DNA of 63,867 bases, the filler included, from Octopus bimaculoides (Eukaryota): the NCBI RefSeq assembly GCF_001194135.2. It is 5 parts of 5 records of this genome, joined end to end, with 100 filler letters (N's around TTAATTAATTAA, not from the genome) between each part and the next. Parts side by side here need not be neighbours in the genome. Positions count along the whole stretch, not along the records: positions 1 to 22,791 come from NC_069000.1; 4 more parts are not named here. One strand, 5' to 3'. Within the stretch, counting starts at the first letter, position 1; each line of letters opens with the position of its first letter. Of the stretch, positions 2,942-22,791 are shown piece after piece. The translations under genes and the position numbers were made by a program. Below the pieces are notes generated by a model. It saw only the letters and a list, made by a program, of their open reading frames with translations. It searched no databases and was not told the origin of the DNA.

Positions 2942-4208
2942 TGTCAGGTTGAATAAAAAAGTAAGCAACGTTTTGAAACATGAAATTCACAATATATTTC
3001 AACACTGCGGAAATTTTATTCATCAAAGTAAGTACCATTACAATCAACACATTTTTGTCAACAAGCTGCAAGTTTGTTTATTCTGGTAACATAAAAATCT
3101 GGAGTTCTGGAGCTGATGAACTCTTTGAATGCACTTTCAGCATCAGTTTGATTTTTGAACTCCTTCTCTCGCAGGAAACCATCAAGGTGCTTGTAAAAGT
3201 GGTAGTCGGTAGGAGAAAGGTCTGGGGAATAAACTGGGTGGGGAAGAACTTCGTAGCCAAGTTCCCTCAACTTCTGGAGCATCATTAGTGAAACATATGG
3301 TCAAGCATTGTCATGAAGAATGATTGGTTCTCTTCTGTTGACCAGTCTGGGATGGAGAAGTAGCAGTTTTTCATTCATTTTGGCAATTTCATGGCAATAT
3401 GTTTCTGCAGTAATGGTTTTTCCGGGTTTTAAGATGTTATAGTGGATGAGTCCAGCAGCACACCACCAAACAGTCACCATAACCTTCTTTTTGAAGAGCT
3501 CTGGTCTAGGGAAGGTTTTTGGTGCTTCATTTTGGTTCAACCACTGCAAAGAACATTTTTATTATTGTACAGAGTCCAATATACAATGCAAGTTACAATA
3601 CAGTTAAGAAATGGATCCGTCTGGTTACGGAGAAGAAGCAATGTACAAGTTTCATATCTGCGCATTTTCTGATTTTCATTCAAATCATGTGGTACTCATT
3701 TGTCAAGCAGTTTTGATTTTCTGATCTTATGCAAATGGTTGCTGGCAGTTTTCTGACTAACTTGAAGTTCTTTTGCCAGTTCTTGAGTGGTTTCACGTGG
3801 ATCTTTCTCAATGATGGTCTTTAATTGACCATCATCAATGACAGATTGGTGTCAACTATGCTCATGATTTTCAAGGCTCAGGTCTCCACTGTGAAATCGT
3901 TTAAACCATTTTCAAGCTGACCACTCAGTGGTCATTTCCTCACCAAACACTTCATTGATATCGCGAGCAGTTTCAGCTGCTTTATGTCCTTTTTTGCAGT
4001 TGAATAGCAAAATTGCTTGAATATCGCACTTTGATAGTTTCCATTTCAAATGATTGTAACATCGGTGAAAAAAATATCAATGTTAATTTATCTATCCCTG
4101 TATTATCAGACAATTGCAAAAAAACGTTGAAAAAAATTCAAAACTGCAAAAATCTGGTACAAATTCTTCATGGTTCAAGATGTTGCTTACTTTTTACTCA
4201 ACCTGGTA
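2942..4208 (-). mobile_element. Full-length degenerate mariner, Hsmar1/SETMAR-like (cecropia-type), transposase pseudogene 4044-3016
   Basis: TIRs (TGT)CAGGTTGAATAAAAAAGTAAGCAAC at the left and TGTTGCTTACTTTTTACTCAACCTGGTA at the right, flanked by TA at 2940-41 and 4209-10. Translation includes KKVMVTVWW, ILHDNA, HPVYSPDLSPTDYHFYKHLDGFL, and WQKCVDCNGTYFDE*. Multiple stops and frameshifts. Confidence 0.95.
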
Positions 4209-4623: not shown

Positions 4624-5037
4624 AGGCATAGAAGTGGCTGTGTGGTAAGTAGCTTGCTTACGAACCATATGGTTCTGGGTTCAGTCCCACTGCGTGGCAC
4701 CTTGGGCAAGTGTCTTCTACTATAGCCTCGGGCCGACCAAAGCCTTGTGAGTGGATTTGGTAGACGGAAACTGAAAGAAGCCCGTATGTATATGTGTATA
4801 TATATATGTGTGTATGTGTGTGTATTATGTTTGTGTCTGTGTTTGTCCCCCCCAACATTGCTTGACAACCGATGCTGGTGTGTTTACGTCCACGTAACTT
4901 AGCGGTTCGGCAAAAGGTCCGATAGAATAAGTACTAGGCTTATAAAAAATAAGTCCTGGGGTCGACTTGCTCAACTAAAGGCGGTGCTCCAGCATGGCCA
5001 CAGTCAAATGACTGAAACAAGTAAAAGAGTAAAGAGT
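4624..5037 (+). mobile_element. tRNA-derived SINE, family A, full length
   Basis: Head AGGCATAGAAGTGGCTGTGTGGTAAG...GGTTCAGTCCC, internal (TA)n/(TG)n, tail CAAATGACTGAAACAAGTAAAAGAGTAAAGAG. Similar copies recur across the window. Confidence 0.9.
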
Positions 5038-6904: not shown

Positions 6905-7219
6905 TGCGCACAAGTATGGGTGTGTAGTAAAGAAACTTGCTTCTTAATCATGAGGTTTTGATTCAGTCATGCCAAACAAGTGTGTTCTTATAGCTCAGGA
7001 CCAACTGGAGCCTTGTGAGTGTATTTGATTGACAGAAACTGAAAGAAGCCTGCAATATACAGGCATGGTTGTGTGGTAAGAAGAAGTTTGCTTCCCAACC
7101 ATATGGTTCCTGGTTCAGACCCACTGCATGGTACCTTGGGCAAGTGTTTTCTACTATAGCCATAGGCCAACCAAAGCCTTGTGAGTGGATTTGCAAGACG
7201 GAAACTGAAAGAAGCCTGC

Positions 7220-7252
<33 letters not shown>

Positions 7253-7360
7253 TTGTCTTTGTGTCTGTTTGTTCGCCACCACTACTTGACAACTGGTGTT
7301 GGTGTGTTTATGTTCCCATAACCTTGCAGTTTGTCAAAAGAGAATGATAGAATAAGTACA
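6905..7360 (+). mobile_element. Two nested/tandem family A SINE copies
   Basis: An older degenerate head and body at about 6905-7055 is followed by a second head (AGGCATGGTTGTGTGGTAAG...GGTTCAGACCC) at about 7060 and its body. Confidence 0.75.
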
Positions 7361-9899: not shown

Positions 9900-11230
9900 A
9901 TTTTCTGAGATCAATTTTATCCTTCTCTCATGTTTGAAAGTAAAGTACCAGTCAAGCACTGGGATTGATTGTATCAACTTACTCTCTCCCCTCAAAATTT
10001 CTAGCCTAGCTAGCAGAAATGTTAGCATATCAATCAAAATGCTTAGCAGCATTTCTTTTACTTTCTGAGTTCAAATTCTGCTAAGGTCAAGTTTGCCTGT
10101 CATTCTTTTGGGGTTCATCATCATCATACATCTGTTTTCCATGCTGGGTCAATATAATCAACTTGTCCCCTCCCCTAAAAATTGTTGGCCTTGTACTAAA
10201 ATTAGAAAGAATTCATCATCATCATCATTGTTTAACATCTGTTTTCCATGTTGGCATGGGTTGGACAGTTTGACAGGAATTGGCCAGTTGGGGAACTGTC
10301 CAGACTTCAGTTGTCTGTTTTGGCATGATTTCTATGGTTAGATGCTCTTCCTAATGCCAACCATTTTACACTGTGCTGAGTGTTTTTTATGTGCCACTGG
10401 TACACATGTTTACACACAAATGCATTTCACCTGGTGCCAGCACAAGTGCATTTTACACGGCACCAGTACATAAAATTAGAAGGAATTATTATTATTACTC
10501 ATTAACATTTTGTAAAAAATGCTCAGTGGCATTTGATCTAGTTCTTCACATTCTAAATTCGAATCTTGCTGAGGTCAACTCTGCTTTTCACTCTTTCAGG
10601 GTCAATAAAATAAATACCAGTCAAGTACTGAAGTTAATGTAATCAACTTTCCTCTCCCATCAAAATTGTTGGCTTTATGCCAAAATTCAAAAGAATTATT
10701 ATATTCAAGGTGGTGTGTTAGCAGAATCATTAGCACACTAGGCAAAATTCTTAGCAGCATTTCTTCTGTCTTTGTGTTCTGCCAAGGTCAACTTTGCCTT
10801 TCATTCTTTTGGATTGATAAAAATAAGTATAAGTTGAGCTCTTGGGGCAGNNNNNNNNNNCATCATCATCATCATTGTTTAACATCTGTTTTCCATGTTG
10901 GCATGGGTTGGACAGTTTGACAGGAATTGGCCAGTTGGGGAACTGTCCAGACTTCAGTTGTCTGTTTTGGCATGATTTCTATGGTTAGATGCTCTTCCTA
11001 ATGCCAACCATTTTACACTGTGCTGAGTGTTTTTTATGTGCCACTGGTACACATGTTTACACANNNNNNNNNNNNNNNNNNNNNNNNNNNAAAAATAAGT
11101 ATAAGTTGAGCTCTTGGGGCAGGAGTCAATGTAATCAACTAGCCCTCTTCTCCAAATTTTCAAGTCTTGTGCCTATAGTATTACACAAACAAGGCTGGTG
11201 GATTGGCAGAATTGGTAAAGCACTATATTA
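9900..11230 (+). mobile_element. Cluster of family B SINE pieces and minus-strand RTE-tail fragments
   Basis: Repeated GCAGAAT..TTAGCA...AAATGCTTAGCAGCATTTC...TTCTGAGTTCAAATTC...GAGGTCAACTTTGCCT modules, interleaved with (CAT)n-GTTTAAC RTE tail sequence. Confidence 0.7.
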
Positions 11231-11623: not shown

Positions 11624-13199
11624 TAATTGAAATCCTGCCAGTACCAATTTTGCTTATCACCCATCAGATGTTGGGTTGGTTTGCTCCTACTTTTACAAGA
11701 ATCTTTGGGCTTATATATTTTAGGAACCATTATTAGAAATAATCTTCAAAAGTGAATATAACAGAGTGCATGTATGTTCATTGTTACAGTGACTGTACCA
11801 TGATGTCAGAATATTTCCATTTAAAATGAAATTGGAATTGCATCTTAAAAAAACATTTTGTTGGGTCTTAGTTTATTGATCTATATGAAACAATTATAAG
11901 ATCCCTTCGGTCCTGTGTTGCTAGTGCTGGTGCCACAGTAAAATGCACCCAGGGCTTATAGTATACTGCTATAGAAACCTACCTGGAATGATATGTATCT
12001 GCACCAATCTATAAGAACAGCTGATCACAATAAGGAAGGACTTGGATCATGATGACTTCTCCAATATATGCCAGGATGGAAATCATCATTATTTTAACAT
12101 CTACCATCATTATTTTAACATTTGGATGGCTCAGATAATATTCATCAAGGCAGATTTTCTATGGTTGAATGCCCTTCCTTTGCCAATCCTGAACGAAGCC
12201 TGCTGCTTGTATGTATATGTGTATGTTTACATTTGCACTCAATGAAAGGTACAGATCCTTCATTTGAAAAATGGCTAAGCGTTAATGACTGGGAGGTATC
12301 TAGTTGTAAAACAATACAATACCTTAATATATTCATGTAACCTATACTAGAATGGGAAAATGGATGTAAACCAAATATGTGTGTGTATGTATGTACATAT
12401 GTATATATTTCTATAGATATATATGTATGTATATGTGTGTGTATATGTACATCTGTCTATGTGTGTATGTATATTTATATATATGCATGTGTGTGTATAT
12501 ATATATATATATATATGATTATAATTGTTTTAACATCCGGTTTTCCATGCTCTCATGAGTTGGGCAGAATTCATTGAGGCAGATTTTTGATGGCCAGATG
12601 ACCTTCCTGTCTCCAGGTTTTCAAGTAAGGTAATATTTCCCCCTAGCTGGATATGTTTTCATAGAAGGTTGGAAATGAAGGATACCACTTTTACGATGAC
12701 AATGCTCAATTACAACTGTCAAGGCAACACCACGCACACACACACACACACATTTATAAAACACAAACACATATAATGGGGTTCTTTCAGTTTCCATCTG
12801 CCAAATTCTCTCACAAGGCTTTGGTCAACCTGGAGCTATAGTAGAAGACACTTGTCCAAGGCGCAGTCAATGAAATCAAACCCAACACTACTTTTAAGCC
12901 TGGGACTCATTCTTTCAGGCTTTTTGCTGAATTGCTAAGTTGCAGAGGTGTAAATAAACCAACACCTGTTGTCAAATACAGAGAGAAAAACACAGACATA
13001 CATACACATATTCACACGCAAACACACACACACACACATCACCCCCATTCTTTTACTAACACTTTTTAGTGTGCCTTTGCTATGAGTCAACAAAATTTAA
13101 TATACTACAAAAGCTGTTGCTAACTGACTGATCACCATTAAAAGAAAACATTTCCACCACTAATACTACCAAATGATTTGCATACAATGAAAATAGAAA

Positions 13200-15380
13200 A
13201 TATTTTTGAAAATTAAATATGAATCCATCAAGGCTCAGTCCTCAGTCATTTTCTATTCATCACAGGCCATCACAGAGGCAGTTAAAATTGGTTGCCCGTG
13301 GGAATTCATATACATTTATTATTTAGTTCTCATAGCTGAAACTGTAATGGAATTAGAGGGGAAATTCCAAGCATGTAAGCTAAACCTAGAATCAAGAGGC
13401 CTCAGTGTAAACTTAACAAAGTTGTAAACTTAACTCAGTGTAAACTTAATAAAGTTTTAGTAAGTTGGAAAGAAGATAGGACATTGATATAATCAGGGAA
13501 GTAGCCTTGCTTGATATGCAGAGGTGTAGGTGTAGGTATAAACTTTATATGCAGTGCCCAATATAACTTACAGACACAAGACACGTGGAATCACAGACAG
13601 ATTAACAGGAGTAAGCTTTATATAACAGATGCACTGGTGTAGTACATACTGTGAGCACATCAGAAACAAATTCTTAAATGTCCAGATGGCTTACTAGAAG
13701 TACTCAGTAGCTTTTGTTACCTAGAGACATAATTAGCAGGGCAAATAGTTGCACTGAAAGTATAGTAGCCAGAGTAAGAACAGGTTGGGAAAAGTCCAGG
13801 AAGCTACCACCACAGATGGCAACAAAGGTCTTTTCCCTCAGAGTGAAGGGCAGATTGTATGGCACTTGTGTTAGAACTGTGATGCTACTAAGTAACAAGA
13901 CATGGTCTTGAACACAGAAGATTTGCAAAGATTAAAAAGAAATGAAGCTGGCATGCACCTAGATAAGATGCAGTTTGGCCTTGTGCCTGGAAGAGATACC
14001 ATGAATGCAATCTTTCTAGCGCTTGTTAACTTGGAGAAGACATTTGGTAGAGTACCAAATTCAGTAGTTTGGTTGTTATTGAGGAAACTAGATGTAGATG
14101 AATGGTTTGTGAGGGTTGTAGAAGCTATGTACACTGATCCAATTAGTAAAGTGAGAGTCAATAACGGTTTTGGTGATGAGTTTTGTGTGAAGGTAGGTGT
14201 CCATCAAGGCTCCGTCCTCTCCTATTCATAGTCTTACAGCCCACCAAAGTGGAGTTTAAGACTGATTGTCCATGGAAATTCTTATATATGCTGATGATCT
14301 AGTTCTTGTAGCTGACTTCAAAGTGAAGATGATGTTTCAGGTATGGAAGCTAAACCTGGAATTGAGAGGCTTCAAGGTAAACTTAGCAAGGATGAAGGTT
14401 TTACTAAGTTGATAAAAAAGACAACCCTATTATTTTCAGAGAAATGGTCTTAATATACAGTGAAGGAATAAGTATAAGCTATGTAAGTTATGGACATTTG
14501 AGGTGTAGTGGAATCACAAGCATACTAACAAAGTAAGTAAACTCTGCACATGACAGATACACTGATGAATACATACTTAGAGCATATCAGAAATAAATTT
14601 TCTTAAATTCCCAGATGCTTTACTAGAAGTAATTGATAAGTTTTGTTACCCAGGAGACATAATTAGCAGAAAAGGTGGTTGAGCTGAAAATATAGCAACC
14701 AGAGTAAGTTCAGGTTAGAAAATGTTCAGTGAGCTGCTACCACTGCAGGCTTTTGCTCTTACAGTGAAGGATAGATTGTTAAGACACTTGCGTTAGAACT
14801 GTGATGCTGCATTGCATTAAGACATGGGCTTTGGTTGCAAGGACCAGAAAGAAATGAAGTTAGTGTGCTCTGATAGATGTGCAATATAAGGCGGCGAGCT
14901 GGCAGAAACGTTAGCACGCCGGGCGAAATGCTTAGCGGTATTTCGTCTGTTGCTACATTCTGAGTTCAAATTCCACCGAGATCGACTTTGCCTTTGATCC
15001 TTTCGGGTTGATTAAATAAGTACCAGTTATGCACTGGGGTTGAGATAATCAACTTAATCTGTGTGTAGCCCCTTGTGGGCAGTAAGAAAATAAGATGTGC
15101 AATATAAGTGCATGAAAGACTAAAAGTAAATGTGTTGAAAGAAAAATTGAGCTAAAAAGGACTCAGATGTAGTGTGCAAGAAAGATGACTGTACTGGTAT
15201 GGACATGTGATGCATGTGGATGAGGACAGCTGTATAATGAAGTGCCAATCAAGGATAGAGGTTATGGAAACCCATCAAGACATGGGATGAAATATTGAAG
15301 GCTGATCTCAGGACCTTGAACTTTATGGAGTAGATGACAAAGGACTGGGATAAATGGTACCTGAAAAGACCTGCTCATCT
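13200..15380 (+). mobile_element. Two head-to-tail RTE-clade LINE RT fragments
   Basis: Copy 1 (about 13200-13945) includes FSLRVKGRLYGTCVRTVML and RNEA. Copy 2 (about 13950-15380) restarts at LDKMQFGLVPGRDT, then VGVHQGSVLS, YADDL at 14287-14301, and the C-terminal WYGHV-like region. Confidence 0.85.
14891..15092 (+). mobile_element. tRNA-derived SINE, family B, with 16-bp TSD
   Basis: Starts GCGGCGAGCTGGCAGAAACGTTAGC. AGATGTGCAATATAAG flanks it exactly at 14875-14890 and 15093-15108. Confidence 0.92.
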
Positions 15381-15578
15381 TGGTGAAACAGTTTCTGGAA
15401 ACAATATTTGTGTGTGTGTATATATATATATTTACACACTGTTATAAACCCAAACTGGAATATCTAAGTTTAAAAGGTTTTAATCAACTAAAAATACAGC
15501 AATCTACAATACAAACAAAGATTGCTAAACTGTAAGCAAAACTAAACTTCAACGCAATAACAGTTTTATGCAGCGATT

Positions 15579-15653
15579 ACTCATTCTACTGTGTACAATC
15601 CTCGTGGAAATGCTCAATGTGAAAGATATAATGGAGTAATATGGAATTCCATT
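15579..15653 (+). pseudogene. Integrase core fragment, opposite strand to gag
   Basis: THSTVYNPRGNAQCERYNGVIWNSI matches the rve segment carrying the catalytic E of DD35E. Confidence 0.85.
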
Positions 15654-15672
15654 TGGAATAATACGCAATTAG

Positions 15673-16117
15673 ACCAACAATTTGACTCAAGTTGAAGATG
15701 ACGTTAATCCCAAGATAAATGCGTCATGAACAGCTTCATTTTTGTGAGTCTCAGCAGCCATTGCTCTGTACCCGCAATCTTTAGTTAGTCATTTCAATTT
15801 CTGTAAATAGTCATCAACAGATAGATTTGGTTCTTGTTTGCATGTCATCAAAAGGTGTCTCGCAAAAATAATGTTCAAGGGTTTCATGTACAGTCTCTCC
15901 AGAGTTTCAATTGCTTCTGCTTAATTCTCACATTCACTTCTTTATCTATGTGCGCTATTAAACACCTAAGCTTGCTTTCATCAGTGATAGGCGGTTCAGC
16001 AGGAAGTGATTCTACAAAATTTATAAAAGTTCTGAAGCAATATTTCCATTCTTTTGAAGCTTGACTCGAACTTGGATCAGCGGTGAATAAATTTGGTTTT
16101 ATAAATTTGCTGTCCAT
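15673..16117 (-). pseudogene. gag: Retrotransposon gag (N-terminal part, frameshifted)
   Basis: MDSKFIKPNLFTADPSSSQASKEWKYCFRTFINFVESL...KLRCLIAHID, a frameshift, then EAIETLERLYMKPLNIIFARHLLMTCKQEPNLSVDDYLQKLK*LTKDCGYRAMAAETHKNEAVHDAFILGLTSS. This follows the Gypsy gag pattern. Confidence 0.85.
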
Positions 16118-16849
16118 TCTCTTTCTCTAGCTATTTTTAGTTGATTAAATTGTTATAAACCCAAACTAGAATATCTAAGTTTAAAAGGTTTTAATCAACT
16201 AAAAATACAGCAATCTACAATACAAACAAAGATTGCGAAATTGTAAGAAAAACCAAAGTTCAACACAATGACAGTTTTATGCAGCGAGTTGCTACAGTCT
16301 CGACTAACTAAAAACCAACACTGAACATGTGCTGCAAACAGAACAGAACTCCACACAGCTGCACTGCAGGCAAATAGCAGCAATCGAGACAATCAAAATC
16401 ACGTGATCAAAACTAAAATCACAGCACACACACACACATATATACATATATATATTTACACACACACACACACACACACATATATGTATTTACACACACA
16501 CACACATATGTATTTACACACACACACATATATACATATATATATATATATTTATTTGCACACACACACACACATGTATATATATGTATTTACACACATA
16601 CATATATATACATAACACCCACAAACAACTGGGCTCCTTATCCAATATCTTCCTCAAACCATCCCCAAGACCAATTATTTCTGCTTAAATGCTGCTGTAA
16701 TTATATTTGAGCAGAACTGCATATTTTATCGTCTTTTTCTCTGATACCAGTTATCTTTCTCACTACCTGGAACAATTTCACTTGATATCCATCCTTTATA
16801 ATACAGTCCCTCTCCTCTCACATTTTGCATTGGTTATTCTTCTGTGCCA

Positions 16850-21821: not shown

Positions 21822-22100
21822 AGGTGTGACGGTGTGGTAAAAAGTTTGATTCTCAACTACATGGTTCCAGGTTCAGTCCCACTGCTTAGCATCTTGGAGA
21901 AGTATTTTCTGCTATAGTTCAGGCTGACCAAAGCCTTGTGAGCAAATTTGGTAAGCAGAAACTGAAAGAAGTCTGTCATGTGTGTGTGTGTGTGTCCTCC
22001 ACCACTGATTGACAACCAATGCTGGTGTGTTTATGTGCCCATAACTTAGTGGTTTGGCAAAGAGAGACTGATAGAATAAGTACTGGTGTCGCTTCACTCA
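21822..22100 (+). mobile_element. Family A SINE, degenerate
   Basis: GGTTCCAGGTTCAGTCCCACTG head, GAAACTGAAAGAAG body and (TG)n. Confidence 0.75.
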
Positions 22101-22674: not shown

Positions 22675-22791
22675 AGGTGTGGCTGTGTGAAGCTTGCTTC
22701 CCAACCACAAGGTTCTAGATTCAGTCCCACTGCATAGCCTTGTGAGTGGATTTGGTAGACGGAAACTGAAAGAAGCCAGTTGTATATATAT
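22675..22791 (+). mobile_element. Family A SINE head, truncated by a gap
   Basis: AGGTGTGGCTGTGTGAAGCTTGCTTCCCAACCAC...GATTCAGTCCCACTGC...GGAAACTGAAAGAAGCC. Confidence 0.75.

What the first reader, a model, noticed from the sequence alone, without database searches (positions are those of the whole stretch)
16132..16207. Gypsy-type LTR element whose primer-binding-site position pairs with its own LTR (candidate self-priming retrotransposon)
Seen in sequence: on the element (minus) strand, the 18 nt starting one base after the 5' LTR (TTTAATCAACTAAAAATA, plus 16149-16132) are the perfect reverse complement of LTR nt 16207-16190, with 40 nt between the arms. No TGG-type tRNA primer-binding site is present, and the gag ATG follows 15 nt later. 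The LTR arm is also conserved in the second LTR copy (15479-15496). Established knowledge: fission yeast Tf1 primes reverse transcription without tRNA by pairing its transcript's 5' end to this position. Inference: this lineage may self-prime using a longer (18 bp) duplex and a very short R-U5 of about 57 nt.
Basis: partly seen in the sequence, partly recalled or inferred. Interest (0 to 1): 0.8.

Follow-up and report, generated by a model that had tools for sequence, protein, structure and literature searches.

The report
Octopus retrotransposon that primes itself
A dead, gutted copy of an octopus gypsy-type jumping gene has a stretch that pairs with its own terminal repeat exactly where such elements normally bind a tRNA primer; relatives across molluscs keep this pairing through matched mutations, so the lineage probably starts DNA copying with its own RNA, a trick so far documented mainly for yeast Tf1 and its kin.

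Summary
On the minus strand, the 18 nt at 16149-16132, one base after the 5' LTR, are the perfect reverse complement of LTR nt 16207-16190, with 40 nt between them. The same arm sits in the 3' LTR remnant. There is no TGG-type tRNA site.

I collected relatives through the gag protein. They come from cephalopod assemblies, the sea slug Elysia, invertebrate-associated metagenomes and one contaminated bacterial MAG. About ten diverged families keep a 12-18 nt LTR/PBS duplex, always starting one base after the LTR's terminal CA. Eleven of 18 pairs show double (compensatory) changes. Pairing is 80%, against 67% in shuffles and 27-46% in slid controls.

Every arm ends in AATAAA or ATTAAA, a poly(A) signal, and is followed directly by a hairpin.

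Relatives have gag(CCHC)-PR-RT-RH-IN, a polypurine tract and TG..CA LTRs. Their best solved match is Ty3, and none shows a chromodomain. So the lineage works like Tf1/sushi self-primers but is probably not one of them.

The window copy is a roughly 985-nt dead remnant. The transcription start, the RNase H cut and the R-U5 length remain inferred.

Verdict: a new variant of a known mechanism, of moderate interest.

The parts
16151..16423 (-). 5' LTR, 273 nt, TGT...ACA
   Evidence: Sequence read. The start was fixed by alignment with the O. vulgaris LTR. Its 3' half is repeated at 15440-15576 with 94% identity (D9).
16190..16207 (-). LTR arm TATTTTTAGTTGATTAAA, the proposed self-primer. Its last six bases, ATTAAA (16195-16190), are a poly(A)-signal hexamer.
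   Evidence: Searches show 18/18 complementarity to 16149-16132. Every relative has an arm ending in AATAAA or ATTAAA.
16156..16183 (-). Hairpin inside the LTR, close behind the arm (analogous to a U5-IR stem-loop)
   Evidence: Predicted folds. All 10 representative families fold with a hairpin between the arm and the PBS, although the hairpin sequences differ.
16150..16150 (-). Single spacer A between the LTR's terminal CA and the primer-binding site
   Evidence: Found in 19 of the 21 leaders tabulated, and also in L033 and L034. The exceptions are L009, which is rearranged, and L002.
16132..16149 (-). Primer-binding site TTTAATCAACTAAAAATA, complementary to the LTR arm
   Evidence: Covariation with the arm across relatives is shown.
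15691..16117 (-). gag remnant: ATG at 16117, stop after 77 codons, one frameshift and two further stops
   Evidence: It is 59-66% identical to the gag proteins P0001-P0007 and 83% identical to O. vulgaris P0014. There is a weak Retrotrans_gag match.
15649..15684 (-). Remnant of the region joining RT to RNase H (QIVGLIAYYSKW), fused to gag by an internal deletion
   Evidence: frame 1. Compare the P0014 C-terminus SRIVGLFAYYSKW and the L006 sequence VIGVFACYAKW.
15440..15577 (-). 3' LTR remnant, 5'-truncated. It carries a second copy of the arm at 15479-15496.
   Evidence: (D9).

Best explanation
The locus is a dead copy, about 985 nt long, of a chromodomain-less Ty3/gypsy LTR retrotransposon family of molluscs. 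It is internally deleted and frameshifted. The lineage very probably starts minus-strand DNA synthesis by self-priming rather than with a tRNA.

Proposed mechanism (inferred):
1. The element's RNA begins in the LTR at or just upstream of the arm.
2. The arm (a 12-18 nt stretch ending in A[A/U]UAAA) folds back over a short hairpin and about 9 unpaired nt. It pairs with the sequence that begins one base after the LTR.
3. The element's RNase H cuts at the 3' end of the arm, as in Tf1.
4. The freed 3'-OH is extended across the spacer and U5-R, giving a strong-stop DNA of about 40 nt.
5. This DNA transfers to the very short R at the RNA's 3' end.
6. Plus-strand synthesis later copies the primer back into the PBS. 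That step, together with selection, keeps arm and PBS matched.

Because the arm contains the poly(A) signal, the same duplex would also hide the 5' copy of that signal. The 3' copy has no partner downstream and would stay usable.

Shown here: the anatomy, the complementarity, its fixed position, its conservation with compensatory changes, the absence of a tRNA-type site, and the canonical PPT, LTR ends and gene order in relatives.

Inferred: the transcription start, the cut, the primer length, and the sizes of R and U5.
For: 1. The duplex is perfect (18/18) and lies at the canonical PBS position.

2. The arrangement recurs in about ten diverged families.
- Cephalopod-type: L001/L003, L006, L007/L008, L010.
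- Gastropod: L005 (Elysia) and L034.
- Metagenome families B (L011-L027) and C (L016-L022, L031).
- L033, a contaminant contig in a bacterial MAG.
Each has 13-16 of 16 complementary bases, with 0-20 of 5000 shuffles doing as well.

3. The alignment was anchored on the end of the poly(A)-type hexamer and on the LTR end, not on the pairing (A3).
- 79.9% of cells are paired, against 67.2 +/- 1.5 in shuffles (0/500).
- The covariation score is 0.340 against 0.115 (0/500).
- 11 of 18 pairs have changes on both sides; PBS position 7 shows G-C, C-G, A-U and U-A.
- Sliding the partner by 1-3 columns drops pairing to 27-46% (per-position table).

4. The duplex always begins exactly one base after the LTR's terminal CA. 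A primer site requires that; a mere leader hairpin does not.

5. No TGG-type PBS exists in the 20-45 nt leader of any copy.

6. All ten representatives fold into the same two-helix shape, with z from -3.0 to -6.2.

7. L006 has a PPT (GGGGGAAGAT) next to a 98%-identical 3' LTR, TG..CA ends, and gag(CCHC)-PR-RT-RH-IN.

8. Tf1-type self-priming with an LTR/PBS duplex is an established mechanism (PMC10085805, PMC4600332).
Against: - No transcript 5' end, cDNA intermediate or RNase H cut site is available.
- Sequence alone cannot decide whether the 5' LTR arm is in the RNA at all.
- Covariation would equally arise from any selected RNA stem, for example masking of the poly(A) signal.
- The sequences are related, so the shuffle statistics overstate independence.
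- Some copies break the duplex. L002, the nearest relative, has lost the arm. L004 has 3 mismatches. L009 is rearranged. L028-30 have 2 mismatches. All four are visibly decayed or chimeric.
- L006 is a young copy (LTRs 98% identical) yet carries a C.A mismatch in the core.
- The implied R (about 30-40 nt) and strong-stop DNA (about 40 nt) are unusually short.
- The three-duplex 'pretzel' structure of Tf1 is not reproduced.
- The window copy itself cannot be functional.
Confidence: 0.7

Rival explanations
1. The arm/PBS duplex is only a regulatory or structural leader stem. It might mask the 5' poly(A) signal, as the HIV-1 poly(A) hairpin does, or serve packaging, dimerisation or control of gag translation. 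Priming would be done by something else.
For: Every arm ends in AATAAA or ATTAAA, and the first six PBS bases are its complement. A complement exists only downstream of the 5' LTR, which is exactly what differential poly(A)-site use needs. Covariation supports a stem, not specifically a primer.
Against: No alternative primer site exists in the 20-45 nt between the LTR and the gag ATG. The stem's 3' strand starts invariably one base after the LTR's CA, which masking would not need. The two functions are compatible, so this reading is more likely an added role than a replacement.
Confidence: 0.13
2. Self-priming occurs, but the primer comes from the arm copy in the 3' LTR, near the RNA's 3' end, acting in cis by circularisation or in trans. 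Transcription would then start downstream of the poly(A) signal in the 5' LTR.
For: In many LTR elements the poly(A) signal lies in U3, so that it is transcribed only at the 3' end. The arm is present in both LTRs. The transcription start is unknown.
Against: Similarity between distant families starts at or just upstream of the arm (conserved YAGAT motif 4-16 nt upstream). R-U5 usually evolves more slowly than U3, so this suggests the arm is transcribed from the 5' LTR. TCAGTT, which resembles an initiator, overlaps the arm in several families. The compact local fold favours action in cis at the 5' end.
Confidence: 0.1
3. The site binds a cellular primer, such as a tRNA fragment or mitochondrial tRNA, and the LTR match is incidental.
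For: Half-tRNA priming exists in copia-type elements (PMC6317226). Host tRNA sets could not be scanned here.
Against: The site begins TTT, not TGG. Its sequence differs between families at 9 of the first 12 positions, and the LTR arm changes in step. Other mollusc gypsy elements such as Steamer carry ordinary TGG sites, so ordinary tRNA sites are easy to recognise when present.
Confidence: 0.04
4. The inverted repeat is a chance match in AT-rich, low-complexity sequence.
For: The region is AT-rich and is flanked by microsatellites.
Against: Three perfect 18-mers were found against 0.14 expected. The repeat recurs at the same position in about ten families, with compensatory changes.
Confidence: 0.01

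Closest known systems
Tf1/Tf2 of Schizosaccharomyces pombe and the Tf1/sushi group of chromoviruses (Tj1, Tosmo, Maggy, Skippy, Cft-1, Boty, Tcn1, sushi-ichi)
   Same: There is no tRNA site. A stretch of the 5' LTR is complementary to the sequence just downstream of the LTR. A stem-loop lies between primer and PBS. Both are Ty3/gypsy elements with the PR-RT-RH-IN order (for the literature; here).
   Different: - The duplex is 12-18 nt here, against 11 nt in Tf1.
- The fold has two helices rather than the three-duplex 'pretzel'.
- The primer contains the poly(A) signal.
- No chromodomain was found in the integrase of relatives.
- The hosts are molluscs, and pol relatives occur in many invertebrate phyla.
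- The primer may not be the extreme 5' end of the RNA.
- Membership in the group was not shown and is probably false.
Predicted self-primers in plants: the Tcn1 clade (gypsy) and the TAR, Houba and Osr-1 elements (copia)
   Same: Self-priming is inferred from LTR/PBS complementarity alone, in lineages outside fission yeast (PMC6317226).
   Different: They belong to other superfamilies or clades and have plant hosts. Here the inference is backed by cross-family compensatory changes.
Steamer and Steamer-like elements (Mag lineage), the best-studied mollusc gypsy elements
   Same: Compact mollusc Ty3/gypsy elements of about 4.8-5 kb with short LTRs (L006 is about 4.8 kb).
   Different: Steamer has a conventional 12-nt TGG... 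site for a Leu tRNA directly after the LTR. The family described here has none.
HIV-1 poly(A) hairpin in R
   Same: The poly(A) hexamer in the 5' copy of the repeat is sequestered in a stem.
   Different: In HIV the stem is local and lies within R, and the primer is tRNA-Lys3. Here the partner strand is the PBS itself.
GalEa (copia) 'conserved hairpin site' and the bivalve TRIM inner-domain repeats
   Same: Animal LTR elements without a clear tRNA site, carrying a conserved short inverted repeat that has been proposed to act in priming (PMC6934838).
   Different: In those elements both arms lie in the internal region, and no link to a known model has been established. Here one arm is in the LTR and the other is exactly at the PBS position.

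Membership tests
Ty3/gypsy LTR retrotransposons (Metaviridae) | Pol domain order PR-RT-RNase H-IN | tested here: met
   Met in relatives L003, L006 and L032. The window copy keeps only gag and a 12-codon remnant of the RT tail.
Ty3/gypsy LTR retrotransposons (Metaviridae) | RT most similar to Ty3-type RT | tested here: met
   The best solved matches of the L032 polyprotein are Ty3 Gag-Pol (7q5b, 1e-59) and Ty3 RT (4ol8, 5e-52), far ahead of retroviral RTs.
Ty3/gypsy LTR retrotransposons (Metaviridae) | LTRs with TG..CA ends, a polypurine tract before the 3' LTR, and gag with a CCHC knuckle | tested here: met
   The window LTR is TGT..ACA. L006 has the PPT GGGGGAAGAT. CCHC knuckles are present in L006 and L032. 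No clean target-site duplication is seen in the window, because the insertion lies inside a microsatellite.
Self-priming LTR retrotransposons (mechanistic class defined by Tf1) | No tRNA-type PBS; the sequence next to the 5' LTR is complementary to a stretch of that LTR | tested here: met
Self-priming LTR retrotransposons (mechanistic class defined by Tf1) | Complementarity maintained in evolution through compensatory changes | tested here: met
   11 of 18 pairs have double changes, and 0 of 500 shuffles reach the observed pairing or covariation.
Self-priming LTR retrotransposons (mechanistic class defined by Tf1) | [quoted passage not shown] | not testable with these tools
   No transcript or cDNA data are available. 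There are only motif hints: TCAGTT overlapping the arm, and YAGAT upstream of it.
Tf1/sushi group of chromoviruses | [quoted passage not shown] | tested here: not met
   There is no Pfam chromodomain in the integrase C-terminal ORFs of L006 and L032, nor in any of the 120 listed integrase relatives.
Tf1/sushi group of chromoviruses | Three-duplex 'pretzel' leader structure | tested here: not met
   All ten representatives fold as a closing arm/PBS stem plus one hairpin made of LTR sequence only. No conserved duplex between PBS-flanking and LTR sequence was seen. The pairing around the gag ATG is not conserved.
Tf1/sushi group of chromoviruses | RT-IN phylogeny places the element inside the group | not tested
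   No reference sequences (Tf1, sushi-ichi, Mag, CsRn1 and others) were available. Named relatives carry only automatic '17.6/opus/297/pro-Pol' labels. That fits a non-chromovirus position only loosely.
CsRn1 clade | Unusual CHCC gag motif (from my own knowledge) | tested here: not met
   The gag of L006 and of the Clonorchis relative L032 has ordinary CX2CX4HX4C knuckles.
Steamer/Mag-type mollusc gypsy elements | TGG... tRNA primer-binding site directly after the LTR | tested here: not met
   One search gives the Steamer site. No such site exists in any leader collected here.

The most novel reading that the evidence does not exclude
A widespread, chromodomain-less Ty3/gypsy clade of invertebrates has evolved tRNA-independent self-priming independently of Tf1/sushi, or has retained it from an ancestor. 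In this clade the primer is also the polyadenylation signal. One duplex would then both start reverse transcription and silence the 5' poly(A) site, which lets R-U5 shrink to about 55-60 nt.
Probability: 0.35. Interest if true: 0.7.

Novelty: new variant of a known kind. Interest (0 to 1): 0.55.

Why it matters
Self-priming is treated in the literature as the hallmark of one chromovirus sublineage, Tf1/sushi, plus a few plant predictions. Finding the same logic in a mollusc gypsy lineage without a chromodomain has several consequences.
- The trick is either older or more easily evolved than thought.
- It supplies a second, differently built RNA structure for studying how an RT/RNase H recognises and cuts an RNA duplex.
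- It explains why LTR-finding pipelines that demand a tRNA site will miss or misclassify these elements in cephalopod and other mollusc genomes.
- It suggests a link between poly(A)-site choice and priming.
- Elements that need no tRNA also escape host defences that target tRNA primer sites, such as 3'-tRNA fragments.

Tried and rejected
- tRNA and known-RNA explanations. ARAGORN found no tRNA in the window. Rfam gave only sub-threshold miRNA-hairpin matches of 19-24 bits against cut-offs of about 90. Both rejected.
- The bacterial promoter/terminator scan is irrelevant to a eukaryotic element.
- The free MAFFT alignment of the leaders (A2) misplaced the arms of Elysia and family C. I replaced it with an ungapped alignment anchored on the poly(A) hexamer and the LTR end (A3).
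- An extra pairing between the sequence upstream of the arm and the gag start codon region is not conserved in other families. Dropped.
- O. vulgaris locus L002: no partner for its PBS and no 3' LTR within reach. It is a decayed copy and uninformative.
- Clonorchis locus L032: it has an intact pol, but its 5' end is degraded and it has no LTRs. I therefore could not test whether pol relatives outside molluscs share the arrangement.
- gag profile against solved structures: nothing meaningful.
- Viral-contig scan: nothing.
- Literature searches for self-priming in invertebrate or mollusc gypsy elements returned no report. The library lacks most subscription papers, for example Butler et al. 2001.
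- A proper RT tree against reference clades could not be built, because no reference sequences were obtainable.

Full report
**1. What is in the window**

Read on the minus strand, the element starts with a 273-nt LTR (16423-16151, TGTGATTTT...TTTATAACA). The order after it is:
- one A (16150);
- TTTAATCAACTAAAAATA (16149-16132);
- 14 nt;
- a gag start codon (16117).

The gag frame stops after 77 codons, resumes in another frame, and carries two more stops. At about 15691 it is fused by an internal deletion to a 12-codon remnant of the region joining RT to RNase H (QIVGLIAYYSKW, 15684-15649). The element then runs into a 5'-truncated 3' LTR (15577-15440), which is 94% identical to the 5' LTR (D9).

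The whole thing is about 985 nt long and sits inside (TG)n/(TA)n microsatellite DNA, without a clean target duplication. It is a fossil, not a working element.

**2.

The 18-mer and its complement occur exactly three times in the window:
- the site after the LTR (16132-16149, minus strand);
- the arm in the 5' LTR (16190-16207);
- the arm in the 3' LTR remnant (15479-15496).

With up to three mismatches allowed, 0.14 matches are expected. The arms are 18/18 complementary and 40 nt apart. The RNA folds with that duplex as closing stem: -31.1 kcal/mol, z = -5.6.

Between the LTR and the ATG there is no TGG. ARAGORN finds no tRNA in the window. Rfam offers only generic hairpin matches far below threshold.

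**3. Relatives**

The conceptual gag protein (X at the frameshift and at one stop) finds 19 proteins. They include Octopus vulgaris (83% over the part present) and Elysia marginata (48%). The window is therefore from an octopod-like mollusc.

I fetched DNA around these genes. I also scanned metagenome and prokaryote-genome contigs with a gag profile. This gave 30 further loci with the 5' leader:
- cephalopod-type families: L001/L003/L004/L009, L006, L007/L008, L010;
- two gastropod-type families: L005 (Elysia) and L034;
- family B (L011-L027) and family C (L016-L022, L031), from invertebrate-associated metagenomes;
- L033, a eukaryotic contig filed inside a bacterial MAG.

**4. The pairing is conserved and covaries**

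In every reasonably preserved copy the LTR ends in ..ACA (..TCA in L034), then comes one A, then TTTA[A/T]T... The following 12-18 nt are complementary to an LTR stretch 35-67 nt upstream.

| Locus | LTR arm | PBS |
|---|---|---|
| window | AGTTGATTAAA | TTTAATCAACT |
| L001 | AGTTGAATAAA | TTTATTCAACT |
| L010 | AGTTTATTAAA | TTTAATAAACT |
| family B | CAGTTCATTAAA | TTTAATGAACTG |
| family C | TTTGGTGATTAAA | TTTAATCACCAAA |
| L033 | ATTGTTGATTAAA | TTTAATCAACAAT |
| L007 | AATTAAGTCAAACAAA | TTTATTTGACTTAATT |
| L034 | GTTAAAGCTCAATAAA | TTTATTAAGCTTTAAC |
| Elysia (L005) | TTAAAAGCTGATAAAA | TTTAATCAGCTTTTAA |

For each representative, 13-16 of the first 16 PBS bases find a partner. At most 20 of 5000 shuffles of the upstream sequence do as well.

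MAFFT misaligned some arms. I therefore built an ungapped alignment anchored on two landmarks that do not depend on pairing: the end of the A[A/T]TAAA hexamer and the LTR end (A3). On it:
- 79.9% of cells form pairs, against 67.2 +/- 1.5% in shuffles (0/500);
- the covariation score is 0.340 against 0.115 (0/500);
- 11 of 18 pairs show changes on both sides; the pair at PBS position 7 occurs as G-C, C-G, A-U and U-A;
- sliding the partner by 1-3 columns lowers pairing to 27-46%.

PBS positions 1-12 are paired in nearly all sequences. Positions 13-18 are paired only in some families. The window's 18 bp is the upper end of the range.

The sequences are related, so the shuffle figures are not probabilities. 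The number of distinct pair types across families is nevertheless hard to explain without a constraint, or a copying mechanism, that links the two strands.

**5. Exceptions**

- L002, the closest relative (O. vulgaris), has a rearranged arm region, and its PBS (TTTAAGCGACTATATATA) has no partner.
- L004 has three mismatches.
- L009 has a rearranged LTR end with an extra arm-like insert.
- L028-30 combine a family-B arm with an L001-type PBS, giving two mismatches.
- All four are visibly degraded or chimeric.
- L006 is young (LTRs 98% identical) but has one C.A mismatch in the core.

**6. Further anatomy**

(a) Every arm ends in AATAAA or ATTAAA (GATAAA in Elysia, CAAACAAA in L007). These are the canonical poly(A) hexamers, so the first six PBS bases are the complement of a poly(A) signal.

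(b) In all ten representatives folded, the arm/PBS stem closes a structure in which a second hairpin begins at or within a few bases of the arm's end. About 9 unpaired nt (typically CUACAACAA) precede the PBS; in a few families this stretch is longer or holds small extra stems. Fold z-scores run from -3.0 to -6.2. The hairpin sequences differ between families (GCUAAUG..CAUUAGU, GCCU..AGGC, GCCAGACAUAC..GUGUUUGGU and others), but the position is kept. This recalls the U5-IR stem-loop that Tf1 needs (literature).

(c) A YAGAT(G) motif lies 4-16 nt upstream of the arm in most families. TCAGTT, which resembles a metazoan initiator, overlaps the arm's 5' part in L003, L009, L010 and family B. These are candidate start sites only.

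(d) Similarity between the window and L001 begins right at the arm. That fits the usual picture of a fast-evolving U3 and a conserved R-U5.

**7. What kind of element**

- L003, L006 and the Clonorchis relative L032 show gag with CX2CX4HX4C knuckles, then protease, RT, RNase H and integrase in gypsy order.
- L006 has the PPT GGGGGAAGAT next to its 3' LTR, TG..CA LTR ends, and a total length of about 4.8 kb.
- The best solved match of the L032 polyprotein is Ty3 (1e-59), well ahead of retroviral RTs.
- Pol relatives at 40-55% identity occur in cnidarians, flatworms, nematodes, spiders, insects, crustaceans and molluscs.
- No chromodomain is detected in the integrase C-termini of L006 or L032, nor in any of the 120 listed integrase relatives.

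I could not build a reference phylogeny. The lineage is a chromodomain-less metazoan Ty3/gypsy clade. The gag knuckle argues against CsRn1, and the PBS argues against Steamer/Mag, which has a TGG... Leu-tRNA site.

**8. How it most likely works**

The established precedent is Tf1. The first 11 nt of its mRNA pair with the PBS, the element's RNase H cuts the RNA duplex, and the freed 3' end primes minus-strand synthesis. Relatives across the Tf1/sushi chromoviruses share this, and it has been predicted for plant Tcn1 and copia TAR elements.

The mollusc family has the same logic at the sequence level, so I propose the same mechanism. The arm is in R. It folds back and pairs with the PBS, and it is cut after ...A[A/U]UAAA. 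It is then extended through the spacer A and about 40 nt of U5-R. That short strong-stop DNA transfers to a short R at the 3' end.

Later copying of the primer by the plus strand rewrites the PBS. By itself this would make arm and PBS evolve in concert, and it may explain mixed states such as L006.

Because the arm carries the poly(A) signal, the duplex would also hide the 5' copy of the signal. The 3' copy has no PBS behind it and stays exposed. This dual role is my inference, by analogy with the HIV-1 poly(A) hairpin (own knowledge).

All steps after the anatomy are inferred. The transcription start, the cut and the R/U5 boundary are untested.

**9. Rivals**

- *A purely regulatory stem.* It fits the covariation. 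It does not explain why the 3' strand always starts one base after the LTR's CA, or what else would prime.
- *A primer from the 3' LTR copy of the arm.* This cannot be excluded without mapping the transcription start.
- *A cellular tRNA or tRNA fragment.* This is contradicted by the TTT start and by family-specific sequences that track the LTR.
- *Chance.* This is excluded by recurrence.

**10. Novelty**

The open literature I could search ties self-priming to Tf1/sushi chromoviruses and to plant predictions. I found no report for invertebrate or chromodomain-less gypsy elements. Key subscription papers were not searchable, so prior description elsewhere (including Repbase notes) cannot be ruled out.

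I rate it a new variant of a known kind. It has the same principle, in a different lineage, with a different leader architecture, a longer duplex, and a primer that doubles as a poly(A) signal.

The specific locus in the window is a dead copy. The interest lies in the lineage.

Noticed in passing
window 3058-3549 (-): Remnant of a mariner-type DNA transposase. The ORF at 3301-3549 matches Pfam Transposase_1 at 1.7e-23. The adjacent ORF at 3058-3285 has the mariner-like motif ...YSPDLSPTDYHFYKHL..., but no Pfam hit.
   Followed up: partly
window 4634-4914, 7068-7338, 21826-22061, 22690-22780; inverted copies at 2813-2931 and 12763-12864: A repeat family that looks like a SINE, about 280 nt long, with 70-96% identity between copies. 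Its 5' part looks tRNA-like (GGTTC.AGTCCC), but ARAGORN calls no tRNA.
   Followed up: no
window 10214-10416 and 10861-11063: Two 203-nt stretches that are 100% identical, 647 nt apart and next to runs of N. This is probably an assembly or scaffolding duplication rather than biology.
   Followed up: no
window 13671-13909 and 14600-14831; ORF 13902-14231 (+): Diverged direct repeats (72-80% identity), about 930 nt apart. One overlaps an ORF with motifs resembling a non-LTR reverse transcriptase. Pfam found nothing at E <= 0.01.
   Followed up: partly
window 15400-15439 and 16424-16615: The element is embedded in (TG)n/(TA)n microsatellite DNA on both sides, and no clean target-site duplication can be read.
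   Followed up: partly
all relatives; window 16190-16195 (-): The 3' end of every LTR arm is a poly(A)-signal hexamer (AATAAA or ATTAAA). The primer-binding site therefore begins with its complement, and pairing would mask only the 5' copy of the signal.
   Followed up: partly
L009 6940-6990: The LTR end is rearranged. An extra arm-like segment (GCAGTTGAATAATGC) sits between the hairpin and the PBS, possibly a scar of aberrant priming or strand transfer.
   Followed up: no
L028 1120-1200 (the same sequence is in L029 and L030): Chimeric leader: the LTR arm is of family-B type (CAGTTCATTAAA), but the PBS is of L001 type (TTTATTCAACTG). This gives two mismatches and suggests recombination between families.
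   Followed up: no
L033 (JAAESD010000556.1, 'MAG: bacterium isolate Ust_3'): A contig of this eukaryotic retrotransposon family, with a perfect 13-nt arm/PBS duplex, is filed in a bacterial metagenome-assembled genome. This is host-DNA contamination of the bin.
   Followed up: partly
L002 6440-6760 (Octopus vulgaris OX597823.1): This is the closest relative of the window copy. Its LTR is highly similar, but the arm region is replaced by a partly duplicated segment, its PBS differs at several positions, and no 3' LTR lies within 9 kb.
   Followed up: partly
L001 11513-14708; L008 1-1432; L004 4292-4669: Genes resembling hAT-family transposases (DUF4371, Dimer_Tnp_hAT) lie next to several cephalopod copies. 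These are probably just repeat-rich neighbourhoods.
   Followed up: no
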